From sequence record NC_019411.1: a stretch of 64,000 nucleotides of DNA, one strand, 5' to 3'. The translations under genes and the position numbers were made by a program. Below are positions 2,739 through 40,918 of the stretch, in pieces (the stretch's first letter is position 1; every line of letters begins with the position of its first letter). Below the pieces are notes generated by a model. The model searched no databases, was not told where the DNA came from, and worked only from the letters and a program-made list of their open reading frames with translations.

Positions 2739-3275
2739 CTAGTCCTGCTCGTCGATCTGGCGAGCGCGTTGAGTGTTACCGTGGCGATAATCGTTCCAGT
2801 GGTCCATCTTGACGAACTTCCCGCCCACCGTGCGTTGGACGAAAATCCCGTCCGGGGAGACCAGCCCGTATTTCTCGTCCGCCTCGTTGATCATGCGGAA
2901 GAACTCCGCCTGCCAGGGGATCGGCATCTCCTGGAGCGACACGCGCGGCAGGCAGAGCCAGGAGGCGTAGGAGAGCCCGAAGAAGTAGCTCGACGGGGTG
3001 TCATGCAGCGGCACGTCGCCGGCGTAGTGCGTCACGTGCCCGGTCTTAGGATCGCGCGTCGAATGGCTCCAGGCGGCCCAGAGGTCGCGGCGGCTGGCCT
3101 CGGCGTCGGCCTGACCCCGGATGATCGCCTGGACGTCTGGCGTATAGCCCGAGAAGGCGGTGGTGTCGTTCTCGTCCAGGCAGTCGGCCAGGGCCGCGCG
3201 CAAGGCCGATCGCAGCTTGTCCTCGGTCAAGGTCGCGTCGGCGGCGATCTGGGCGATACGGTCGCGGAAGGTCAT
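2739..3275 (-). CDS. Hypothetical protein (MTFRDRIAQ...)
   Basis: ATGA overlap with upstream gene. Confidence 0.75.
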   Translation of the reverse strand: MTFRDRIAQIAADATLTEDKLRSALRAALADCLDENDTTAFSGYTPDVQAIIRGQADAEASRRDLWAAWSHSTRDPKTGHVTHYAGDVPLHDTPSSYFFGLSYASWLCLPRVSLQEMPIPWQAEFFRMINEADEKYGLVSPDGIFVQRTVGGKFVKMDHWNDYRHGNTQRARQIDEQD

Positions 3276-3700
3276 TGGCAGACGTCCTTGGCGTCGCGCG
3301 CGGTCACGGGCGACATGTAGGTGTCGGGGTCCCAGGCGCCGGGCGTGCTGCCGCCATAGACATAGTCGCCCGGCGCGGGCGGCGTCATCGACCCGCCGTT
3401 GCTGGCGACCTTGCCCGGATTGGCGTAGGCCGAGAGCCACAGGCGCCCGTCGCTGCCGCGCAGGACGAATTGGCCGTTCTGGCGGCAGACGCGAGCGATG
3501 GTCATGCGCCATGCGTAGTTGAGCTTGGCCTTCTTGGCGGCCTCGTCCCGCAACCACTGCTCATGCCCCAGACGCGCCCAGCGCGCCTTCTTGGCCACGA
3601 GGTCCTTGTGCTCCTGCGACCAGAGGGGGTGGTTGTACTCGTCGCACGCCGAGAGGCTGATCCCGGCGACGACGAGCAGGAGGAGAGCGCCGCGCCGCAT
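3272..3700 (-). CDS. Putative lipoprotein
   Basis: MRRGALLLLVVAGISLSA-C: signal peptide with lipobox LSAC. Confidence 0.75.
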   Translation of the reverse strand: MRRGALLLLVVAGISLSACDEYNHPLWSQEHKDLVAKKARWARLGHEQWLRDEAAKKAKLNYAWRMTIARVCRQNGQFVLRGSDGRLWLSAYANPGKVASNGGSMTPPAPGDYVYGGSTPGAWDPDTYMSPVTARDAKDVCQ

Positions 3701-34169: not shown

Positions 34170-34425
34170 AGGTGATCCTGTACGGGAGCCCGCCGACGCA
34201 GATTTTCCCGCGTCGGCCGTCGGCGGTGGTGAAGCGGAAGCCCTGGCGGCTCTTGGTGCCGGCGCAGGACCACCATGCGCGGTGGAAGCTGACGACCTCG
34301 ACGCCGGTGTCGCGCTCGACCAGATGTCGAGCATGACGTCCCTCCCAGGTGTAGGCCCAGACCCCGATGGCGAAGAAGACCAGAGTCAGGGAGCCATAGA
34401 CGGCCCCTTTGACATAGTCCTCCAT
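34156..34425 (-). CDS. Membrane-anchored hypothetical
   Basis: N-terminal TM helix; C..C pair. Confidence 0.65.
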   Translation of the reverse strand: MEDYVKGAVYGSLTLVFFAIGVWAYTWEGRHARHLVERDTGVEVVSFHRAWWSCAGTKSRQGFRFTTADGRRGKICVGGLPYRITYGRD

Positions 34426-34802
34426 CAGGCCGCCACGAGCCCGGTGATCACGTCGGTGACGATGCGACGCTTCTCGGCCGGCATGCCCGCCAGCGCCAGG
34501 ATCGTCTTGGCGCCGATCTCGGCGACGGCGGTCTCGACGTCGGCCCGGCCGTCGGTCAGGAACGCCGGATCGTCGACCGGCGGATAGAAATGCCCGATGT
34601 CCTTCTTCAGGAACTGGGCCGCCTCATAGAGCTTCGAGGACGAGATGCGGTTATGCCCGCGCTCGTATTTCTGGACCTGCTGGAAGGTCACGCCGATCGC
34701 CTCGGCGAGTTGGCCTTGCGAGAAGCCGGCCGTCTTGCGGGTGTCGCGCAGCTTGCGCCCCACATAGACGTCGACGGGGTGCGGGGTCTTGTCGTCAGCC
34801 AT
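34425..34802 (-). CDS. XRE-family HTH transcriptional regulator (alphaproteobacterial type)
   Basis: PHPVDVYVGRKLR..R...G.SQ..LA..IGVTFQQVQKYERG.NRIS.SKL. Confidence 0.92.
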   Translation of the reverse strand: MADDKTPHPVDVYVGRKLRDTRKTAGFSQGQLAEAIGVTFQQVQKYERGHNRISSSKLYEAAQFLKKDIGHFYPPVDDPAFLTDGRADVETAVAEIGAKTILALAGMPAEKRRIVTDVITGLVAA

Positions 34803-36141: not shown

Positions 36142-36173
36142 AAAAGAAAACCGCCGCCCCGAAGGACGGCGGT
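36142..36173 (-). terminator. Rho-independent terminator
   Basis: ACCGCCGTCC-TTCG-GGGCGGCGGT then TTTCTTTT on minus strand. Confidence 0.9.
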
Positions 36174-36199
36174 CATGACAGAGCATGTCAGGAGGGACG

Positions 36200-38323
36200 T
36201 CAGACGTCCAGAGCGAAGACCGGCGGGGAGACGTCCGGCTTCTGAATGATGAATCCCCGATCCAAGAGGGGCGGGAAGACCTGCTTGAGCACGCCGGCCG
36301 CGACCCCGGCTTCCTCGGCGATTTCGGCGAACGTGAAGGCCTCGCGCTGACCGGCGCTGGCGACAAACAGATCGTTGAGCGCCAGGATCACCGCGCCCGC
36401 CGGACTGATCTCGTAGGCCATGTCGAAATTCGGGTCTTCCGATAGCCGCAGCAGGCCTTCCGCCTCCAGGTTCGCGATGAGCGCCTTGAGTTGGTCGACC
36501 TTGACCGCGCCAAGATGGGTTTGGATTTCCCAGGGCGTCGCCGGCTCCTCGGCGCGCACGGCTTGCAGCGTCGCGATCAAGGCGATCGCCGGCATGGCCC
36601 GCACGATCATCTCGTCGCCAACCGTCAGGTCCGGGGCGTTGACCAGCAGGTCATTGATCACCGCGTCGCCGTGGGTCTCGACATAGGTCCGCAGCCGCTT
36701 GAGGGCGACCAGGAAATCGTCCTTGGTGATCGGCTCGATGCGGAAGGTCAGGAGCGGGTCGGTCGGAATCTCCGAGAAGTAGGCCCGACCCCGGTGGCTC
36801 CAGCCCTCGACCACATGCAGGAAGAGATCGATCGGCATGGCGACGGCGCCAAAGCCCAGTCGCGCATCGTCCGTCGCCTCCTCGACCTGCGCCAAGGCGT
36901 TGTCGATCGCTTCGAGCGTGAAGCCCCCGACAAGGCCGTTTTCCGCCGCGTCCAGCACGTTGGCCGCTTCTTCGGTGCCGAGCCCTTCGACGACCATTTC
37001 CGAGGCCTCCTGAGCCGTTTCCTGCGGCAGGGCGTCGGCGAGCTTGCTCATCGCCTCGGCGACGCCGCTCGTATCGAGTTCCAGCTTCAGGGCCAGCTTC
37101 TCGGGACGCGCCGAGTAGGGCACGCCCTGGATCACCACGGCGCCCAGGTCGCCGACGACGCGCTTGGTCACTTCCAGATAGGCGTAGCGCGAGGCGGCGT
37201 TGAGCAACGACAGCCGTTCGAAGACGATCTGCTGCTCCTGCTCGCGCGACAGGATGCCCGTCTCCAGGATGAACAGCGGCTCGGAGCCATCCAGCGGGGG
37301 CTTGGCCTCGCCGTCGTCTTCCGGAAGGTCCTCGTCGAAATCGGCGCCGCTGATCGGCTCGCTCTCCGGCGGGGTGAAGCGGATGCCCGGCTCGCGGGGC
37401 GGTTCGGCGGGAGTGGCGTCGTCGAGAGGCATGTCGGTCCTTTGAGGCTTGGAGGTGATGAAGAGCGTGGTGAGATCGACGTCCCAGACCCCGCGCCCGT
37501 CGGTGAAGAGCGCCATGAAGGTCCCCAGGCGCGCATCCCAGCGGATGGTCTGGATCACGCCGTTGACGTCGCCATAGACGCCGGTCGCCCCCACGAGTTC
37601 ATCGCGCAGGACCTCCGCATGGTCGTGGCACTCGCCGAGCGTCGCCGGGCGCACGGCGTGGAACGGGTATTGCTGGTAGGCGCCCGGCGGCGAGACGAGG
37701 CGGACATTGACGTAGAGCGGCCCCAGATAGGTGTGGGCGTCGCGCAGGAAGCCGACCACGGTCTCCCCGTCGTTCTGGGTCGCCACCACGGGCATGCCGG
37801 CGCAGTTAGCCGTCAGGACCGCCGGATAGTCCTGGGGATAGGCCACGGCGTACAGGTGGAGATGATCACCCCGGCGCTGGGCCTTCCAGTCGGCGACACA
37901 CCAAGCCGCCACCCGCGTGGCCCCGAACTCCGGCGTCTCCTCGATCAAGACGCCGCCGTCCGGAAGGTCCGCCTGCCCGACGTAAGGAACGACCTCGCTA
38001 TGGCTGACGCTCCAGGCGGGCTTGGGAAATTGCGGGGTGATCATGAGCTTCTCGGTGAAGGTGAGATTGATGGCGTCGGCGTAGTGAACATACGGGCCGA
38101 CCGGGGTAGTCCAGGGCGGATCACCCTTGCGGATGTCCGACAGCGGCACCGCGACGTGCCTGCCGTTGGGCTGGACGATGTCGGCCAGGATGCGCGGCGG
38201 CTGGTGCATCAGGGTCACGACGTGCCCCTCGCCCGCCTCGAAGGTGCGGCTCTTGGGCCACCAGACCTTGGACCCGGTCCAGTGGATCGACTGGATGACG
38301 AGGTCTTGTTCGGTCCCGATCAT
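36200..38323 (-). CDS. Large multidomain hypothetical, acidic centre, two C-terminal winged-helix-like segments
   Basis: 707 aa; LIANLEAEGLL...YEISPAG and TFAEIAEEAGV...LLDRGFI. Confidence 0.75.
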   Translation of the reverse strand: MIGTEQDLVIQSIHWTGSKVWWPKSRTFEAGEGHVVTLMHQPPRILADIVQPNGRHVAVPLSDIRKGDPPWTTPVGPYVHYADAINLTFTEKLMITPQFPKPAWSVSHSEVVPYVGQADLPDGGVLIEETPEFGATRVAAWCVADWKAQRRGDHLHLYAVAYPQDYPAVLTANCAGMPVVATQNDGETVVGFLRDAHTYLGPLYVNVRLVSPPGAYQQYPFHAVRPATLGECHDHAEVLRDELVGATGVYGDVNGVIQTIRWDARLGTFMALFTDGRGVWDVDLTTLFITSKPQRTDMPLDDATPAEPPREPGIRFTPPESEPISGADFDEDLPEDDGEAKPPLDGSEPLFILETGILSREQEQQIVFERLSLLNAASRYAYLEVTKRVVGDLGAVVIQGVPYSARPEKLALKLELDTSGVAEAMSKLADALPQETAQEASEMVVEGLGTEEAANVLDAAENGLVGGFTLEAIDNALAQVEEATDDARLGFGAVAMPIDLFLHVVEGWSHRGRAYFSEIPTDPLLTFRIEPITKDDFLVALKRLRTYVETHGDAVINDLLVNAPDLTVGDEMIVRAMPAIALIATLQAVRAEEPATPWEIQTHLGAVKVDQLKALIANLEAEGLLRLSEDPNFDMAYEISPAGAVILALNDLFVASAGQREAFTFAEIAEEAGVAAGVLKQVFPPLLDRGFIIQKPDVSPPVFALDV

Positions 38324-38745
38324 GCGGACGCCGCCGCGCCGGCCGGCGTCAAGCCGTAGATGGTGGGGCCGCGCGGCGACTTGCCGAGCGCGACCACTTC
38401 CAGATAGCCCATATTATTCAAAGCCTTGGCTGTTTCATGATCGGGGTGATCGTTGAAGACGTTGAGGCGCCCGCCCTCGCCCATCGCCTGGGCGGCGCGC
38501 AGAAGACTCGCCTCGGCTTCGGTCAGGGTGACCAAGGCGACGTCCTCCAGCGCCACGTCGATCACGCAGGTCTGACCCTGGTGAACGAACTCGATGATCG
38601 CCAGCCGGCGATAGGTCCCCGGCAGGACCGCGAGGCAGACGCCTCGGACCTCGACCTTCTGGCGGGCGGTGATCGGGAGATAGAGGCTCGTCTTGACGGC
38701 CTTGCCCTTGAGGGACAGATGCTCGTGCGTCGCCAGCGGGATCAT
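38320..38745 (-). CDS. Hypothetical protein with C-terminal winged-helix-like segment
   Basis: LT.AE..LL...AKALNNMGYL...YGLTPAG. Confidence 0.65.
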   Translation of the reverse strand: MIPLATHEHLSLKGKAVKTSLYLPITARQKVEVRGVCLAVLPGTYRRLAIIEFVHQGQTCVIDVALEDVALVTLTEAEASLLRAAQAMGEGGRLNVFNDHPDHETAKALNNMGYLEVVALGKSPRGPTIYGLTPAGAAASA

Positions 38746-38987
38746 GGCTCGACCTTCCGGACAGTGTAGGAGAATTCGTCGTGGACGCGACCGTCGAAAC
38801 TAGCCTCGTAGCCGGGGCCGAGTTCGGCCAGGATGCGCGCCTCGATCTCGGCGAAGTCGATGTTCGCCATCGCCTGTTCGGCCGCCCGCATCTGCTGGAG
38901 GAAGCCGTCCTTGATCTGGCGCCCCGCCTCGGTGCGGATCGGGATGTTCTGGATCGGCGGCTCGGATTTCGACAGACGCTCGCCCAT
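38742..38987 (-). CDS. Miniature family-A DNA polymerase palm-like protein (81 aa)
   Basis: [28 protein letters not shown] ~ Pol I [40 protein letters not shown] ~ motif A ADYSQIELRIMA; RVHDEF ~ motif C QVHDEL; coupled on both sides (TGATG, ATGA). Confidence 0.75.
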   Translation of the reverse strand: [81 protein letters not shown]

Positions 38988-39535
38988 CAGGCCCTCCGGC
39001 GATAGACCCGCACCGGGCGGGTGGGGAGGCGTTTCTCGGGCGGCTTGTAGGCGACCAGGGCATGGCTGATGCAGTAGACGCCTGCCTCGGCGCGGCACCC
39101 GCAATGGCCAAAGTCCGGCGAGTTCGGGTCGCCATAGGGCCAGCGGCACATTCCGCGCTTGAGTTCGGCCGTCGCGAACAGCCGCGCCGGGCGCGGCGGG
39201 ATGACCGCCGTTCCTTCGGGGACCAGGGCGAGCTTGGGCTTGGCCGGCGGAGCGGGCTTTTCGACCTTCTTGGGCTTGCGCGCCGTGGCCTTCTTGACCT
39301 TGCGGACCTGGATGCCCAGGCCGCGCGTCTTCTTGCGGCGGGCGGTCGGAGGCGGAACCTTCTCGCCCAGTTCGCCGGCGGCCTTCAGTCGGTCGGCCTT
39401 GCCGCAGACGGCGCTCTTGGTGCGCGGCACGCTCAGGCGCTGACCGATCTCCTTGGTCCCGACCGGCTCCGCCCAGAGCTTCTTGAGCAGGGCGATGTCC
39501 TCGTCCGGCCAGTCGGAATTCCGCTTCTTCACCAC
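38987..39535 (-). CDS. gcrA: GcrA cell-cycle regulator homologue
   Basis: W.DE.I..LKKLW......EI...L....TKSAV.GK..RL; C-terminal EL....CRWP.GDP...DF..CG.......YC..H...AY. Confidence 0.92.
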   Translation of the reverse strand: MVKKRNSDWPDEDIALLKKLWAEPVGTKEIGQRLSVPRTKSAVCGKADRLKAAGELGEKVPPPTARRKKTRGLGIQVRKVKKATARKPKKVEKPAPPAKPKLALVPEGTAVIPPRPARLFATAELKRGMCRWPYGDPNSPDFGHCGCRAEAGVYCISHALVAYKPPEKRLPTRPVRVYRRRA

Positions 39536-40375: not shown

Positions 40376-40647
40376 TGAACACCTTCTTCCTCCGGCAGAC
40401 CAAGCGGGACGAGCAGGGTCGACGCTACTTCGAGTTCGTCGATCCTGACCTGACCCAGCGCCTCTATGTCCGCAAGCCGCCGGACGAATGGTCCGAGGGC
40501 TTCCCGATCGTCCTGGAGGACTTCGTCAATGGCAAGCCCGCCGGCTCCATCATCTGCCCGGCCGGAAAGAAGCGGGGCCACGGCTTCGCGGCCTTCTTCA
40601 AGGCCAACCCCAAGGATTTCCGCAAGCTCAAGAAAGGCCGCCTATGA
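40375..40647 (+). CDS. Hypothetical protein
   Basis: TGATG overlap. Confidence 0.7.
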   Translation: MNTFFLRQTKRDEQGRRYFEFVDPDLTQRLYVRKPPDEWSEGFPIVLEDFVNGKPAGSIICPAGKKRGHGFAAFFKANPKDFRKLKKGRL

Positions 40648-40910
40648 GGATTCCCCAGCCCGTCGAATTCACCGTGGCCGACCTCATCGCCCACCTTGCG
40701 ACCCTTCCCCAGGACGCCAAGGTTGGCGTGCGTGGCGGGTTCGGGGGCTTCCGGCCGCTCGACGAGATCGCCCCGATCGAACTCGTCACCCTCTATGGCG
40801 AGGACGAGACTGACCGGCTGACCCTGGCGACCGCCGATCCCATCGCCCAGAAGTGGATGGCCCAGGAGTCCCGCGCTGGCGAGCCCTTCACCGCCATCAT
40901 TCTCGACTAG
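40644..40910 (+). CDS. Hypothetical protein (MRIPQPVEF...)
   Basis: ATGA overlap. Confidence 0.7.
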   Translation: MRIPQPVEFTVADLIAHLATLPQDAKVGVRGGFGGFRPLDEIAPIELVTLYGEDETDRLTLATADPIAQKWMAQESRAGEPFTAIILD

Positions 40911-40918
40911 GAGGACCC

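What the first reader, a model, noticed from the sequence alone, without database searches (positions are those of the whole stretch)
38742..38987. 81-aa miniature DNA polymerase I: palm motifs stitched together with the fingers removed
Seen: the ORF translates to [81 protein letters not shown]. It is coupled to gcrA by TGATG and to the next gene by ATGA, which fits a maintained gene rather than debris. Established: E. coli Pol I has, in this order, [28 protein letters not shown], motif A ADYSQIELRIMA (D705, E710) and motif C QVHDEL (D882). All three blocks appear here in order. R4-to-D44 spacing (40) matches R668-D705 (37), but the two catalytic Asp (D44, D70) are 26 residues apart instead of 177, so the fingers and motif B are gone. 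Inference: a stand-alone minimal palm. It could be a decoy for defence systems that sense replication proteins, an inhibitor or mimic of host Pol I, a minimal metal-dependent nucleotidyl transferase, or one piece of a split enzyme.
Basis: partly seen in the sequence, partly recalled or inferred. Interest (0 to 1): 0.92.

Follow-up and report, generated by a model that had tools for sequence, protein, structure and literature searches.

The report
Phage mini-protein from a polymerase fragment
A Caulobacter phage keeps a small gene whose 81-residue product is one piece of the DNA polymerase I active-site region and cannot be a polymerase; similar mini-genes occur in unrelated phages, so it probably has a job, but that job is still unknown.

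Summary
The window is Caulobacter phage CcrSwift. The ORF at 38742-38987 (-) is gp228, already annotated "putative Pol I DNA polymerase" ("palm domain" in phiCbK gp221), but no paper in the library discusses it. The ORF, its translation and both overlapping junctions are exactly as described.

Residues 4-57 are clearly homologous to bacterial Pol I motif 2 ([14 protein letters not shown]..GRxIRxAF) plus motif A (Pfam 1e-11). The third block, DGRVHDEF, beats shuffled controls. However, it matches the Pol I strand that precedes motif 2 as well as it matches motif C, so "fingers deleted" is only one reading.

Two AlphaFold models give helix-helix-hairpin with no structural match to the Pol I palm. 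No fingers or motif B lie in the 64-kb window.

The gene is intact in all 26 phiCbK-like records, with dN/dS about 0.3, lower than both neighbours.

New here: stand-alone 52-79-aa ORFs with the same motif 2 + motif A core, without the tail, occur in at least ten otherwise unrelated phage-like contigs. Some proteins carry only the motif 2 peptide fused to other domains. These minis vary at positions that were invariant or nearly so in the 62 true polymerases checked.

Best reading: a selected, non-catalytic polymerase-derived module. Its mechanism is only inferred: DNA or primer-end binding, or Pol I interference.

The parts
38742..38987 (-). Mini-PolA ORF (CcrSwift gp228, 81 aa plus stop)
   Evidence: ORF and translation. 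GenBank annotation 'putative Pol I DNA polymerase'. Pfam DNA_pol_A 1e-11. phrog_12116 4e-56.
38901..38984 (-). Residues 2-29: Pol I motif 2 ([28 protein letters not shown]; R4 = E. coli R668, Q13/N14 = Q677/N678, R18 = R682)
   Evidence: Aligned to Pol I. 19 of 22 residues (1-22) are invariant in six phiCbK-like phages. The core [20 protein letters not shown] is kept in all distant minis. Residue equivalences were counted from the E. coli sequence (own knowledge).
38865..38900 (-). Residues 30-41: linker. It replaces the Pol I beta-strand that leads to motif A and is predicted helical.
   Evidence: Variable among relatives, and 5 aa shorter in BL57. It falls within the AF2 helix 20-41.
38817..38864 (-). 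Residues 42-57: motif A ([16 protein letters not shown]; D44 = D705, E49 = E710, R51 = R712)
   Evidence: 21 of 26 residues in 35-60 are invariant. Falls in the AF2 helix 45-56.
38745..38816 (-). Residues 58-81: lineage-specific tail, predicted beta-hairpin with H69-D70 at the turn. DGRxHDEF is invariant in 7 of 8 positions.
   Evidence: Ambiguous Pol I similarity (upstream strand 25.8, motif C 22.1, null 14.0 +/- 2.1). Hairpin predicted. Absent from all distant minis.
38993..38997 (-). Shine-Dalgarno-like GGAGG, 5 nt upstream of the ATG, inside the end of gcrA
   Evidence: Read from the sequence.
38987..39535 (-). Upstream gene, phage GcrA-like regulator (gp229). Its stop overlaps the mini's start (TGATG).
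   Evidence: Pfam GcrA 5.4e-25. Annotation. The overlap is conserved in four further phages.
38320..38745 (-). Downstream gene gp227 (141 aa, unknown function). Its start overlaps the mini's stop (ATGA).
   Evidence: phrog_11942 of unknown function. No Pfam or PDB hit.
36200..38218 (-). gp226 (672 aa, unknown function), last gene of the same minus-strand cluster
   Evidence: Annotation. phrog_12845 of unknown function.
36149..36174 (-). Intrinsic terminator closing the cluster gp230-gcrA-mini-gp227-gp226
   Evidence: Also annotated in the GenBank record.

Best explanation
gp228 is a real, selectively maintained phage accessory gene. Its product is a non-catalytic derivative of one segment of a bacterial-type family A DNA polymerase: motif 2 plus the motif A helix. 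It carries a C-terminal hairpin specific to the phiCbK lineage.

It belongs to a family, not previously described as such, of 50-80-aa 'motif 2/motif A' mini-proteins that is scattered among unrelated phages. In some proteins the motif 2 peptide alone is fused to other domains.

Shown here: homology, loss of everything a polymerase needs, purifying selection, and recurrence in other phages.

Inferred: the module works through what this segment does inside Pol I, which is to hold the primer-template duplex at the 3' end through the residues equivalent to R668, Q677, N678, R682 and R690. On this reading it acts as a small DNA-end or primer-terminus binder. It would then compete with or block a Pol I-type enzyme on phage or host DNA, or, in the fusions, target a partner domain there. 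It would act early in infection, co-translated with the phage GcrA homologue.
For: Homology.

Not a polymerase:
- Only 51 of 381 Pfam positions are covered.
- NCBIfam polA scores 46 bits against a cut-off of 720.
- No fingers, motif B or further PolA piece is found in the ORF, the flanks or the whole 64-kb window.
- The N675 equivalent is N in 62/62 true PolA but is not N in 13/14 minis. S707 and L711 equivalents are likewise relaxed.

Selected:
- Intact in 26 Caulobacter phage records at 70-100% identity and 78-83 aa.
- Synteny and both overlaps are conserved.
- dN/dS is 0.28-0.31 across three lineages, against 0.46-0.65 for gcrA and 0.59-1.07 for gp227 across those lineages. Fisher p is 3e-4 to 5e-4.
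- Conservation is concentrated in the Pol I-like blocks.

Family:
- Stand-alone ORFs P0013, P0027, P0149, P0150 and P0200 sit in contigs that share no other gene with the window or with each other.
- IMG/VR loci L030, L031, L038, L039/40, L045 and L046 have no other PolA piece within 3 kb.
- All eight stand-alone minis scanned (five contig ORFs plus L030, L031, L046) score better against the phiCbK mini profile phrog_12116 than against the true-polymerase phrog_17.

DNA-binding inference:
- The invariant core of the family (P..[14 protein letters not shown]/E/R of motif A) includes the residues that contact primer-template DNA in Klenow fragment (own knowledge of the Pol I literature).
- The short minis are basic, pI 9.5-11.4.
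- The motif 2 segment is predicted unstructured on its own. This would fit (inference) folding on a ligand.
- The motif 2 peptide recurs alone as an N-terminal or internal module in L043 and L047b.

Early timing is inferred only. phiCbK tgrL (gp216), five genes downstream on the same strand, is an early gene (PMC10688885).
Against: - There is no experimental datum on this protein. The phiCbK RNA-seq table that would show its expression is truncated in the stored copy.
- The phiCbK-type minis are acidic, pI 4.9-6.1, unlike a typical DNA binder and more like a protein-binding mimic.
- In Pol I, motif 2 works inside a large scaffold. Whether 50-80 residues can bind DNA alone is unknown.
- The tertiary structure is not reliably predicted: pTM is 0.39, and the BFVD model of the same protein superposes at TM 0.35.
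- No conserved neighbour across the family points to a pathway.
- The catalytic Asp of motif A is kept in 12 of 14 minis. Pure DNA binding does not require it.
Confidence: 0.4

Rival explanations
1. Protein mimic or decoy. The mini displays the most conserved linear epitope of bacterial Pol I (LQNIPIRT..GRxIRxAF, motif A) in order to bind a protein and not DNA. That protein could be a host factor, a defence sensor that monitors or recognises PolA-type polymerases, or host Pol I itself. The mini would titrate or inhibit it.
For: - The mini resembles bacterial Pol I and not the phage's own T7-like polymerase. BLASTP against Swift gp120 gives E about 0.9. The best PDB hit is a bacterial Pol I.
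- The phiCbK-type proteins are small and acidic, like many known phage anti-host proteins (own knowledge).
- The gene is scattered like a moron among unrelated phages.
- The motif 2 segment is predicted disordered alone, like a docking peptide.
Against: - No partner is known.
- Most distant family members are basic.
- In Pol I this segment lines the DNA cleft and is not a known protein-protein interface (own knowledge).
- No full-length PolA among 1.84 billion representatives stands out as a recent donor. The best full-length hit scores 53 bits, against 179 for self.
Confidence: 0.22
2. Cell-cycle module partner. In phiCbK-like phages the mini works together with the phage GcrA homologue, to which it is translationally coupled. 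For example, it could help push the infected swarmer cell toward a replication-competent state or modulate host replication or repair genes.
For: - The gcrA stop and the mini start overlap in every phiCbK-like phage examined.
- The tblastn search found the mini only in 26 phiCbK-like Caulobacter phage records, and CcrColossus is not among them. Gill et al. report that Colossus also lacks gcrA (PMC3556154).
Against: None of the distant minis sits next to a GcrA-like gene. Their neighbours are ORFans, a C5 methylase and a ParB-like protein. If the family has one function, it does not depend on GcrA.
Confidence: 0.1
3. Non-functional remnant of a captured polA fragment. It would be kept open only because ribosomes must read through it to reach gp227 and gp226 (translational coupling).
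For: - Tight overlaps on both sides.
- Many short 'PolA' proteins in public databases are simply frameshifted polA.
Against: - Amino-acid-level constraint is stronger than in both neighbours.
- Conservation is concentrated in specific blocks.
- Related stand-alone ORFs recur in unrelated phage contigs without any other PolA sequence nearby.
Confidence: 0.1
4. Minimal metal-dependent enzyme. D44 would pair with D70/E71 to bind Mg2+ and catalyse a nucleotidyl-transfer-like reaction.
For: - D44, E49, H69, D70 and E71 are invariant in the phiCbK-like set.
- The tail scores 22.1 against motif C, against a null of 14.0 +/- 2.1.
- It is predicted as a hairpin with H-D at the turn, as in motif C (the motif C geometry is from own knowledge).
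Against: - There are no dNTP-binding fingers or motif B anywhere.
- The tail is absent from all distant relatives.
- It matches the non-catalytic upstream strand at least as well.
- The motif A Asp is lost in P0027 and L038.
- No palm-like fold is recovered.
Confidence: 0.04
5. One piece of a split polymerase that assembles with another phage or host protein supplying the thumb, fingers and motif C.
For: - Split and truncated PolA genes do occur in phages. L022 is one example, and phrog_10285 is a 321-aa 'DNA polymerase' family that begins at this motif.
- In L047 a motif 2-bearing ORF lies just downstream of a divergent PolA.
Against: - No complementary PolA piece lies in the 64-kb window or within about 1-6 kb of any of the stand-alone minis, as far as each contig extends.
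- The phage's own T7-like polymerase is full length, with its own motif 2, motif A and motif C.
Confidence: 0.04

Closest known systems
Family A DNA polymerase (bacterial Pol I; Pfam PF00476, NCBIfam TIGR00593), palm segment with motif 2 and motif A
   Same: Residues 4-57 are homologous (E=1e-11). They align collinearly to Pol I, E. coli 668-717 by my count. The equivalents of R668, Q677, N678, R682, D705, E710 and R712 are kept.
   Different: - 81 aa instead of about 900.
- No 5' nuclease, 3'-5' exonuclease, thumb, fingers or motif B.
- Motif C is uncertain.
- The beta-strand before motif A is replaced by a predicted helix.
- Equivalents of N675, S707 and L711, invariant or nearly so in polymerases, are substituted.
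- It cannot be a polymerase.
The phage's own replicative T7-like DNA polymerase (CcrSwift gp120; phiCbK gp123)
   Same: Both are family A-derived and encoded by the same genome.
   Different: No significant pairwise similarity (BLASTP E about 0.9). gp120 has T7-type motif 2 (NRASHSNPNIAQVP) and is complete, so the mini is neither a copy nor a piece of it (Gill et al. 2012, PMC3556154).
phrog_12116 / UniRef 'DNA-directed DNA polymerase family A palm domain-containing protein' (existing database cluster of the phiCbK-like minis)
   Same: gp228 is a full-length member (4e-56). It is named 'Pol I DNA polymerase, palm domain' in GenBank and UniRef.
   Different: In the protein search the close cluster contained only Caulobacter phages, and the database name implies a polymerase. 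The distant stand-alone minis and the fusions found here are not in that close cluster, yet they match the phrog_12116 profile best.
Small phage anti-host or anti-defence proteins that copy or mimic a host component (e.g. Ocr-type mimics, orphan antitoxin-like counter-defence genes such as those against DarTG1, PMC11825919)
   Same: - Small size and accessory-gene context.
- Patchy distribution among unrelated phages.
- Derived from a cellular protein part.
   Different: No target, phenotype or structural mimicry has been shown for gp228. This resemblance is by analogy only.

Membership tests
Family A DNA polymerase (functional enzyme) | Motif A with catalytic Asp and steric-gate Glu (DYSQIELR) | tested here: met
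   IDFAEIEAR aligns to motif A, with D44 = D705 and E49 = E710. The S707 and L711 equivalents are substituted.
Family A DNA polymerase (functional enzyme) | Motif B / O-helix of the fingers (RRxAKxxNFGxxYG) for dNTP binding | tested here: not met
   A Pol I profile of 323 columns matches only columns 61-125 at most (63-113 in CcrSwift). Nothing else in the ORF, its neighbours or the 64-kb window matches.
Family A DNA polymerase (functional enzyme) | Motif C (xVHDE) supplying the second catalytic carboxylate | tested here: inconclusive
   The tail DGRVHDEF scores 22.1 against motif C and 25.8 against the strand upstream of motif 2. Both exceed all 300 shuffles. HMMER gives 3.2 bits or less. Identity is 7/15 versus 8/15.
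Family A DNA polymerase (functional enzyme) | Whole-protein score above curated equivalog cut-off; thumb-palm-fingers fold | tested here: not met
   NCBIfam polA scores 46 and 44 bits against cut-offs of 720 and 600. Foldseek of two AF2 models finds no Pol I (best E 0.7-3.2). The Pfam domain cut-off is passed (44.9 > 34.3), but only 51 of 381 positions are covered.
Stand-alone motif 2/motif A mini-proteins of phages (family delineated here; phrog_12116 as nucleus) | ORF of about 50-85 aa with core [20 protein letters not shown], a 5-20-aa spacer, then D[YF]xxxExR, and no other PolA sequence nearby | tested here: met
   Alignment. Contexts. The eight stand-alone minis scanned hit phrog_12116 best.
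Stand-alone motif 2/motif A mini-proteins of phages (family delineated here; phrog_12116 as nucleus) | Substitution at polymerase-invariant positions (N675 equivalent not Asn) | tested here: met
   gp228 has Pro at this position. 13 of 14 minis are non-Asn, against 62 of 62 Asn in full-length PolA.
Split or intein/intron-interrupted polymerase gene | Complementary ORFs that encode the remaining polymerase parts close by | tested here: not met
   Six-frame profile search of the window and of all mini loci found none.
Pseudogene / gene debris | Frameshifts, variable truncation, dN/dS near 1 | tested here: not met
   26 intact copies. dN/dS 0.28-0.31, p <= 5e-4.

The most novel reading that the evidence does not exclude
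Phages of many lineages carry a portable 25-60-residue 'motif 2 module' taken from family A polymerases. It occurs stand-alone (as in gp228) or fused to other domains. It would dock onto primer termini or nicks, or onto a Pol I-dependent host process, and so block host Pol I-type repair, replication or a defence pathway that depends on it. That would be a new class of polymerase-derived, non-catalytic anti-host effector. The phiCbK version would in addition be a circular permutant, with the strand that normally precedes motif 2 moved to the C-terminus.
Probability: 0.2. Interest if true: 0.75.

Novelty: new variant of a known kind. Interest (0 to 1): 0.55.

Why it matters
If the family is functional, databases currently mislabel dozens of 50-80-aa phage proteins as 'DNA polymerase'. 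These proteins would be an example of a phage exapting a fragment of an essential cellular enzyme's active site for a non-enzymatic role.

It would give a small, tractable handle on how motif 2 of Pol I recognises the primer terminus. It would also point to a possible phage strategy against host Pol I-dependent repair, replication or defence.

For phiCbK specifically, it adds a second host-derived gene, translationally coupled to the phage GcrA homologue, to the set of factors by which this model phage may manipulate Caulobacter.

If it turns out to be inert, the practical lesson is an annotation one: a Pfam DNA_pol_A hit over 50 residues is not a polymerase.

Tried and rejected
1. Collinear reading of the tail, in which the ORF is one uninterrupted Pol I fragment running into the 'GEDIH' region after motif A. 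Some HMMER and tblastn alignments extend that far. However, the profile score for that region is 9.9, no better than shuffles. Rejected as unsupported, though it remains the simplest history.
2. Derivation from the phage's own T7-like polymerase. Rejected.
3. Recent capture from the host polA. No outlier donor appears among 1.84 billion representatives. The genome-contig scan returned only one unrelated bacterium, so Caulobacter polA itself was not compared.
4. Structure-based assignment. Two AF2 runs and three Foldseek searches gave no informative match, and the tertiary fold was inconsistent.
5. Other short 'PolA' proteins in the protein database. Most are frameshifted canonical polA and were discarded.
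6. Function by neighbourhood. Neighbours of the minis are mostly ORFans, and no common partner was found. gp227 and gp226 have no Pfam, NCBIfam or PDB match.
7. Expression data. The phiCbK RNA-seq supplement is truncated in the stored copy.
8. Promoter scan and CtrA-box search (TTAA-N7-TTAA). Nothing was found in this region or in the window.
9. Literature search for a described function. None was found.
Full report
**Identity of the window and the ORF.** Megablast shows that the window is Caulobacter phage CcrSwift (JX100809.1), window coordinate = record coordinate - 124000. The ORF at 38742-38987 on the minus strand is CcrSwift_gp228, annotated 'putative Pol I DNA polymerase'. Its phiCbK orthologue gp221 is annotated 'putative Pol I DNA polymerase, palm domain'. 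The resemblance to Pol I has therefore been in GenBank, UniRef and PHROGs (phrog_12116) since 2012. The genome paper (Gill et al. 2012, PMC3556154) discusses only the T7-like replicative polymerase and the GcrA homologue and never mentions this ORF. No other paper in the library discusses it.

**The observation.** A GGAGG lies 5 nt upstream of the ATG.
- Residues 4-56 match Pfam DNA_pol_A (E=1e-11, profile positions 120-170 of 381).
- They match NCBIfam polA positions 630-679 of 890.
- They match solved bacterial Pol I structures. The best is M. smegmatis 6vdc residues 343-394, followed by Bst, Klenow and Taq.
- This covers motif 2 (TGRLSS..PNLQNIPxR..GRxIRxAF) and motif A.
- By counting along the E. 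coli sequence (own knowledge), R4, Q13, N14, R18, D44, E49 and R51 correspond to R668, Q677, N678, R682, D705, E710 and R712.

**The third block.** No profile search gives a significant second hit for the tail. I built a Pol I profile from full-length enzymes returned by the exhaustive search and scanned it with the aligned tails of six phiCbK-like minis.
- Without gaps, the best match is the strand 'TGRIHTSFNQTVTA' that immediately precedes TGRLSS in Pol I (23.8). Motif C 'LLQVHDELVFEV' comes second (14.6). The shuffled maximum is 6.1 +/- 3.1.
- With gaps, the scores are 25.8 and 22.1, against a shuffled maximum of 14.0 +/- 2.1. None of 300 shuffles reaches either score.
- The collinear region after motif A scores 9.9, which is no better than chance.
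- Individual enzymes reach 8/15 identities for the upstream strand (for example 'DGRVHGEFNLT' in P0024) and 7/15 for motif C.
- The invariant D65-G66-R67, F72 and T75 are explained by the upstream strand. The invariant D70-E71 are explained by motif C.
- AlphaFold predicts a hairpin with H69-D70 at the turn. That is the geometry of motif C (own knowledge).

The tail is therefore Pol I-like above chance, but its origin is undecided. A chance or convergent resemblance cannot be excluded for a 24-residue segment.

**It is not a polymerase.**
- Nothing else in the ORF, the flanking genes or the whole 64-kb window matches the polymerase profile.
- The phage's own polymerase (gp120, outside the window) is a complete T7-like enzyme. 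It has its own motifs and no significant similarity to gp228.
- Two AlphaFold runs, with 4-sequence and 26-sequence alignments, agree on secondary structure: no helix or strand in 1-19 apart from one three-residue turn in the second model, helices 20-41 and 45-56, and a hairpin at 60-78. pTM is 0.39.
- Foldseek finds no Pol I palm or any other significant PDB match.
- The BFVD model of the near-identical protein superposes at only TM 0.35. The tertiary arrangement should therefore not be trusted.

**It is under selection.** tblastn finds the gene intact in all 26 phiCbK-like Caulobacter phage records that matched (70-100% identity, 78-83 aa), and no other Caulobacter phage record, including CcrColossus, appeared among the hits. 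The order small ORF - gcrA - mini - 141/154-aa gene - large gene, and both overlaps, are conserved in CcrRogue, BL57, CcrBL10 and BL64.

| Gene | dN/dS between Shapirovirus, Poindextervirus and BL57 lineages |
|---|---|
| mini (gp228) | 0.28-0.31 |
| gcrA | 0.46-0.65 |
| downstream gene (gp227) | 0.59-1.07 |

- The excess of synonymous change in the mini has Fisher p of 3e-4 to 5e-4.
- Invariant residues cluster in motif 2 (19/22), the motif A region (21/26) and DGRxHDEF (7/8). The linkers are free to vary.

**A wider family.** The exhaustive profile search of 1.84 billion representatives found only one close cluster, the phiCbK-like minis. Among the thousands of ordinary PolA hits it also surfaced a few short proteins with the mini's peculiarities.
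- A profile search of the 5.8-billion-protein set ranked P0013, P0027, P0149 and P0150 directly after the phiCbK-like proteins. P0200 was also recovered.
- Their contigs (GC 56-72%) are arrays of small ORFan genes, often with overlapping stops and starts. They include a C5 DNA methylase, a ParB-like protein and a helicase. The mini is the only gene they share with the window or with each other.
- A scan of IMG/VR added stand-alone minis in L030, L031, L038, L039/L040, L045 and L046, in viral contigs of up to 206 kb. None has another PolA piece within 3 kb.
- Of 30 non-phiCbK viral loci carrying the exact [LI]QNIP[IL]RT motif, 7 are stand-alone minis and 4 are odd fusions.
- None of these relatives has the phiCbK tail. 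Several start just before 'P.LQNIP' and so lack the R668 equivalent.
- All eight stand-alone minis scanned (five contig ORFs plus L030, L031, L046) score better against the phiCbK mini profile than against the true-polymerase PHROG.
- The N675 equivalent is Asn in 62 of 62 full-length polymerases but not in 13 of 14 minis. The S707 and L711 equivalents are similarly relaxed. The Q677, N678, I679, P680, R682, G686, I689, R690, F693, E710 and R712 equivalents are mostly kept.
- In L043 the motif 2 peptide alone is fused to a phrog_2072 domain. In L047 it sits inside a 210-aa protein next to a divergent PolA.
- Most other short 'PolA' entries in the databases are frameshifted canonical polA and were discarded.

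**Mechanism.** What is shown is a conserved, non-catalytic, polymerase-derived module. What it does is inference.
- The residues the family keeps are those that, in Klenow fragment and Taq, hold the primer-template duplex near the 3' terminus (own knowledge).
- The short minis are basic (pI 9.5-11.4).
- The motif 2 segment is predicted to be unstructured alone.
- It also occurs as a portable peptide in fusions.
- I therefore favour a small DNA-end or primer-terminus binder that competes with, or blocks, a Pol I-type enzyme (confidence 0.4 for the whole statement, much less for the specific target).
- The acidic phiCbK-type proteins (pI 4.9-6.1) fit a protein-binding mimic or decoy better (0.22).
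- A role tied to the phage GcrA homologue is possible for this lineage only (0.1).
- A coupling-only remnant (0.1), a minimal enzyme (0.04) and a split-polymerase piece (0.04) are disfavoured by the evidence above.
- Early expression is inferred from the neighbouring early gene tgrL (PMC10688885). The table that would show it directly is truncated in the stored copy.

**Novelty and verdict.** The Pol I resemblance of this ORF is already annotated, so the bare observation is not new.

New points from this work:
- The third block is ambiguous.
- The protein is not a palm in any tested sense.
- The gene is under purifying selection.
- It belongs to a broader, unrecognised family of stand-alone and fused motif 2/motif A modules in unrelated phages.

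I class it as a new variant of a known kind, with moderate interest (0.55). It is a genuine curiosity with a testable set of hypotheses, but no function has been shown yet.

Noticed in passing
L043:2956-3549 (+) (IMG/VR 3300046512_000131): A 197-aa protein whose N-terminus is the Pol I motif 2 peptide alone ([22 protein letters not shown]). It is fused to a phrog_2072 domain of unknown function and has no motif A.
   Followed up: partly
L047:429-2396 and 2746-3378 (+) (IMG/VR 3300033142_002623): A 210-aa ORF carries a canonical bacterial-type motif 2 ([17 protein letters not shown]). It lies just downstream of a divergent full-length PolA whose own motif 2 is of another type (GRLIQPQNMPR).
   Followed up: partly
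L042 and L044: 2068-3156 (+): One 363-codon stop-free frame holds two PolA pieces in permuted order: the 'DIHRKTAAELFG..QRQLAKT' finger start comes before '[28 protein letters not shown]'. Whether it is a real gene or scrambled debris was not determined.
   Followed up: no
L039:3540-5087 (+) (viral contig with a mini at 2977-3177): A 515-aa protein with WGR, PARP regulatory and PARP catalytic domains is encoded about 360 bp downstream of the mini in a viral contig.
   Followed up: no
window 34425-34802 (-), CcrSwift gp223: By synteny, this HTH protein is the orthologue of phiCbK gp216 (tgrL), an XRE regulator shown to be an early gene that represses host transcription (PMC10688885). It lies in the next minus-strand cluster after the terminator at 36149-36174.
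   Followed up: partly
L007:3171-5026 (+) (phage BL57): The large gene downstream of the mini cluster is a single 1.8-2.0-kb ORF in Swift, Rogue, BL10 and BL64. In BL57 it is annotated as two overlapping ORFs (453 and 1437 bp), which could reflect a frameshift or an annotation split.
   Followed up: no
protein database hits P0153-P0256: Dozens of 55-145-aa 'DNA_pol_A' proteins on long bacterial contigs are canonical polA fragments. They run into out-of-frame tails such as 'RRRHPRRH', so they are frameshift or assembly artefacts that could be mistaken for mini-polymerases.
   Followed up: yes
L002 vs window 40376-40911 (+ strand cluster opposite the mini operon): phiCbK and several relatives carry about 270 bp more than CcrSwift in the divergently transcribed small-gene cluster. 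There is one extra small ORF, and the megablast match is split into two pieces.
   Followed up: no
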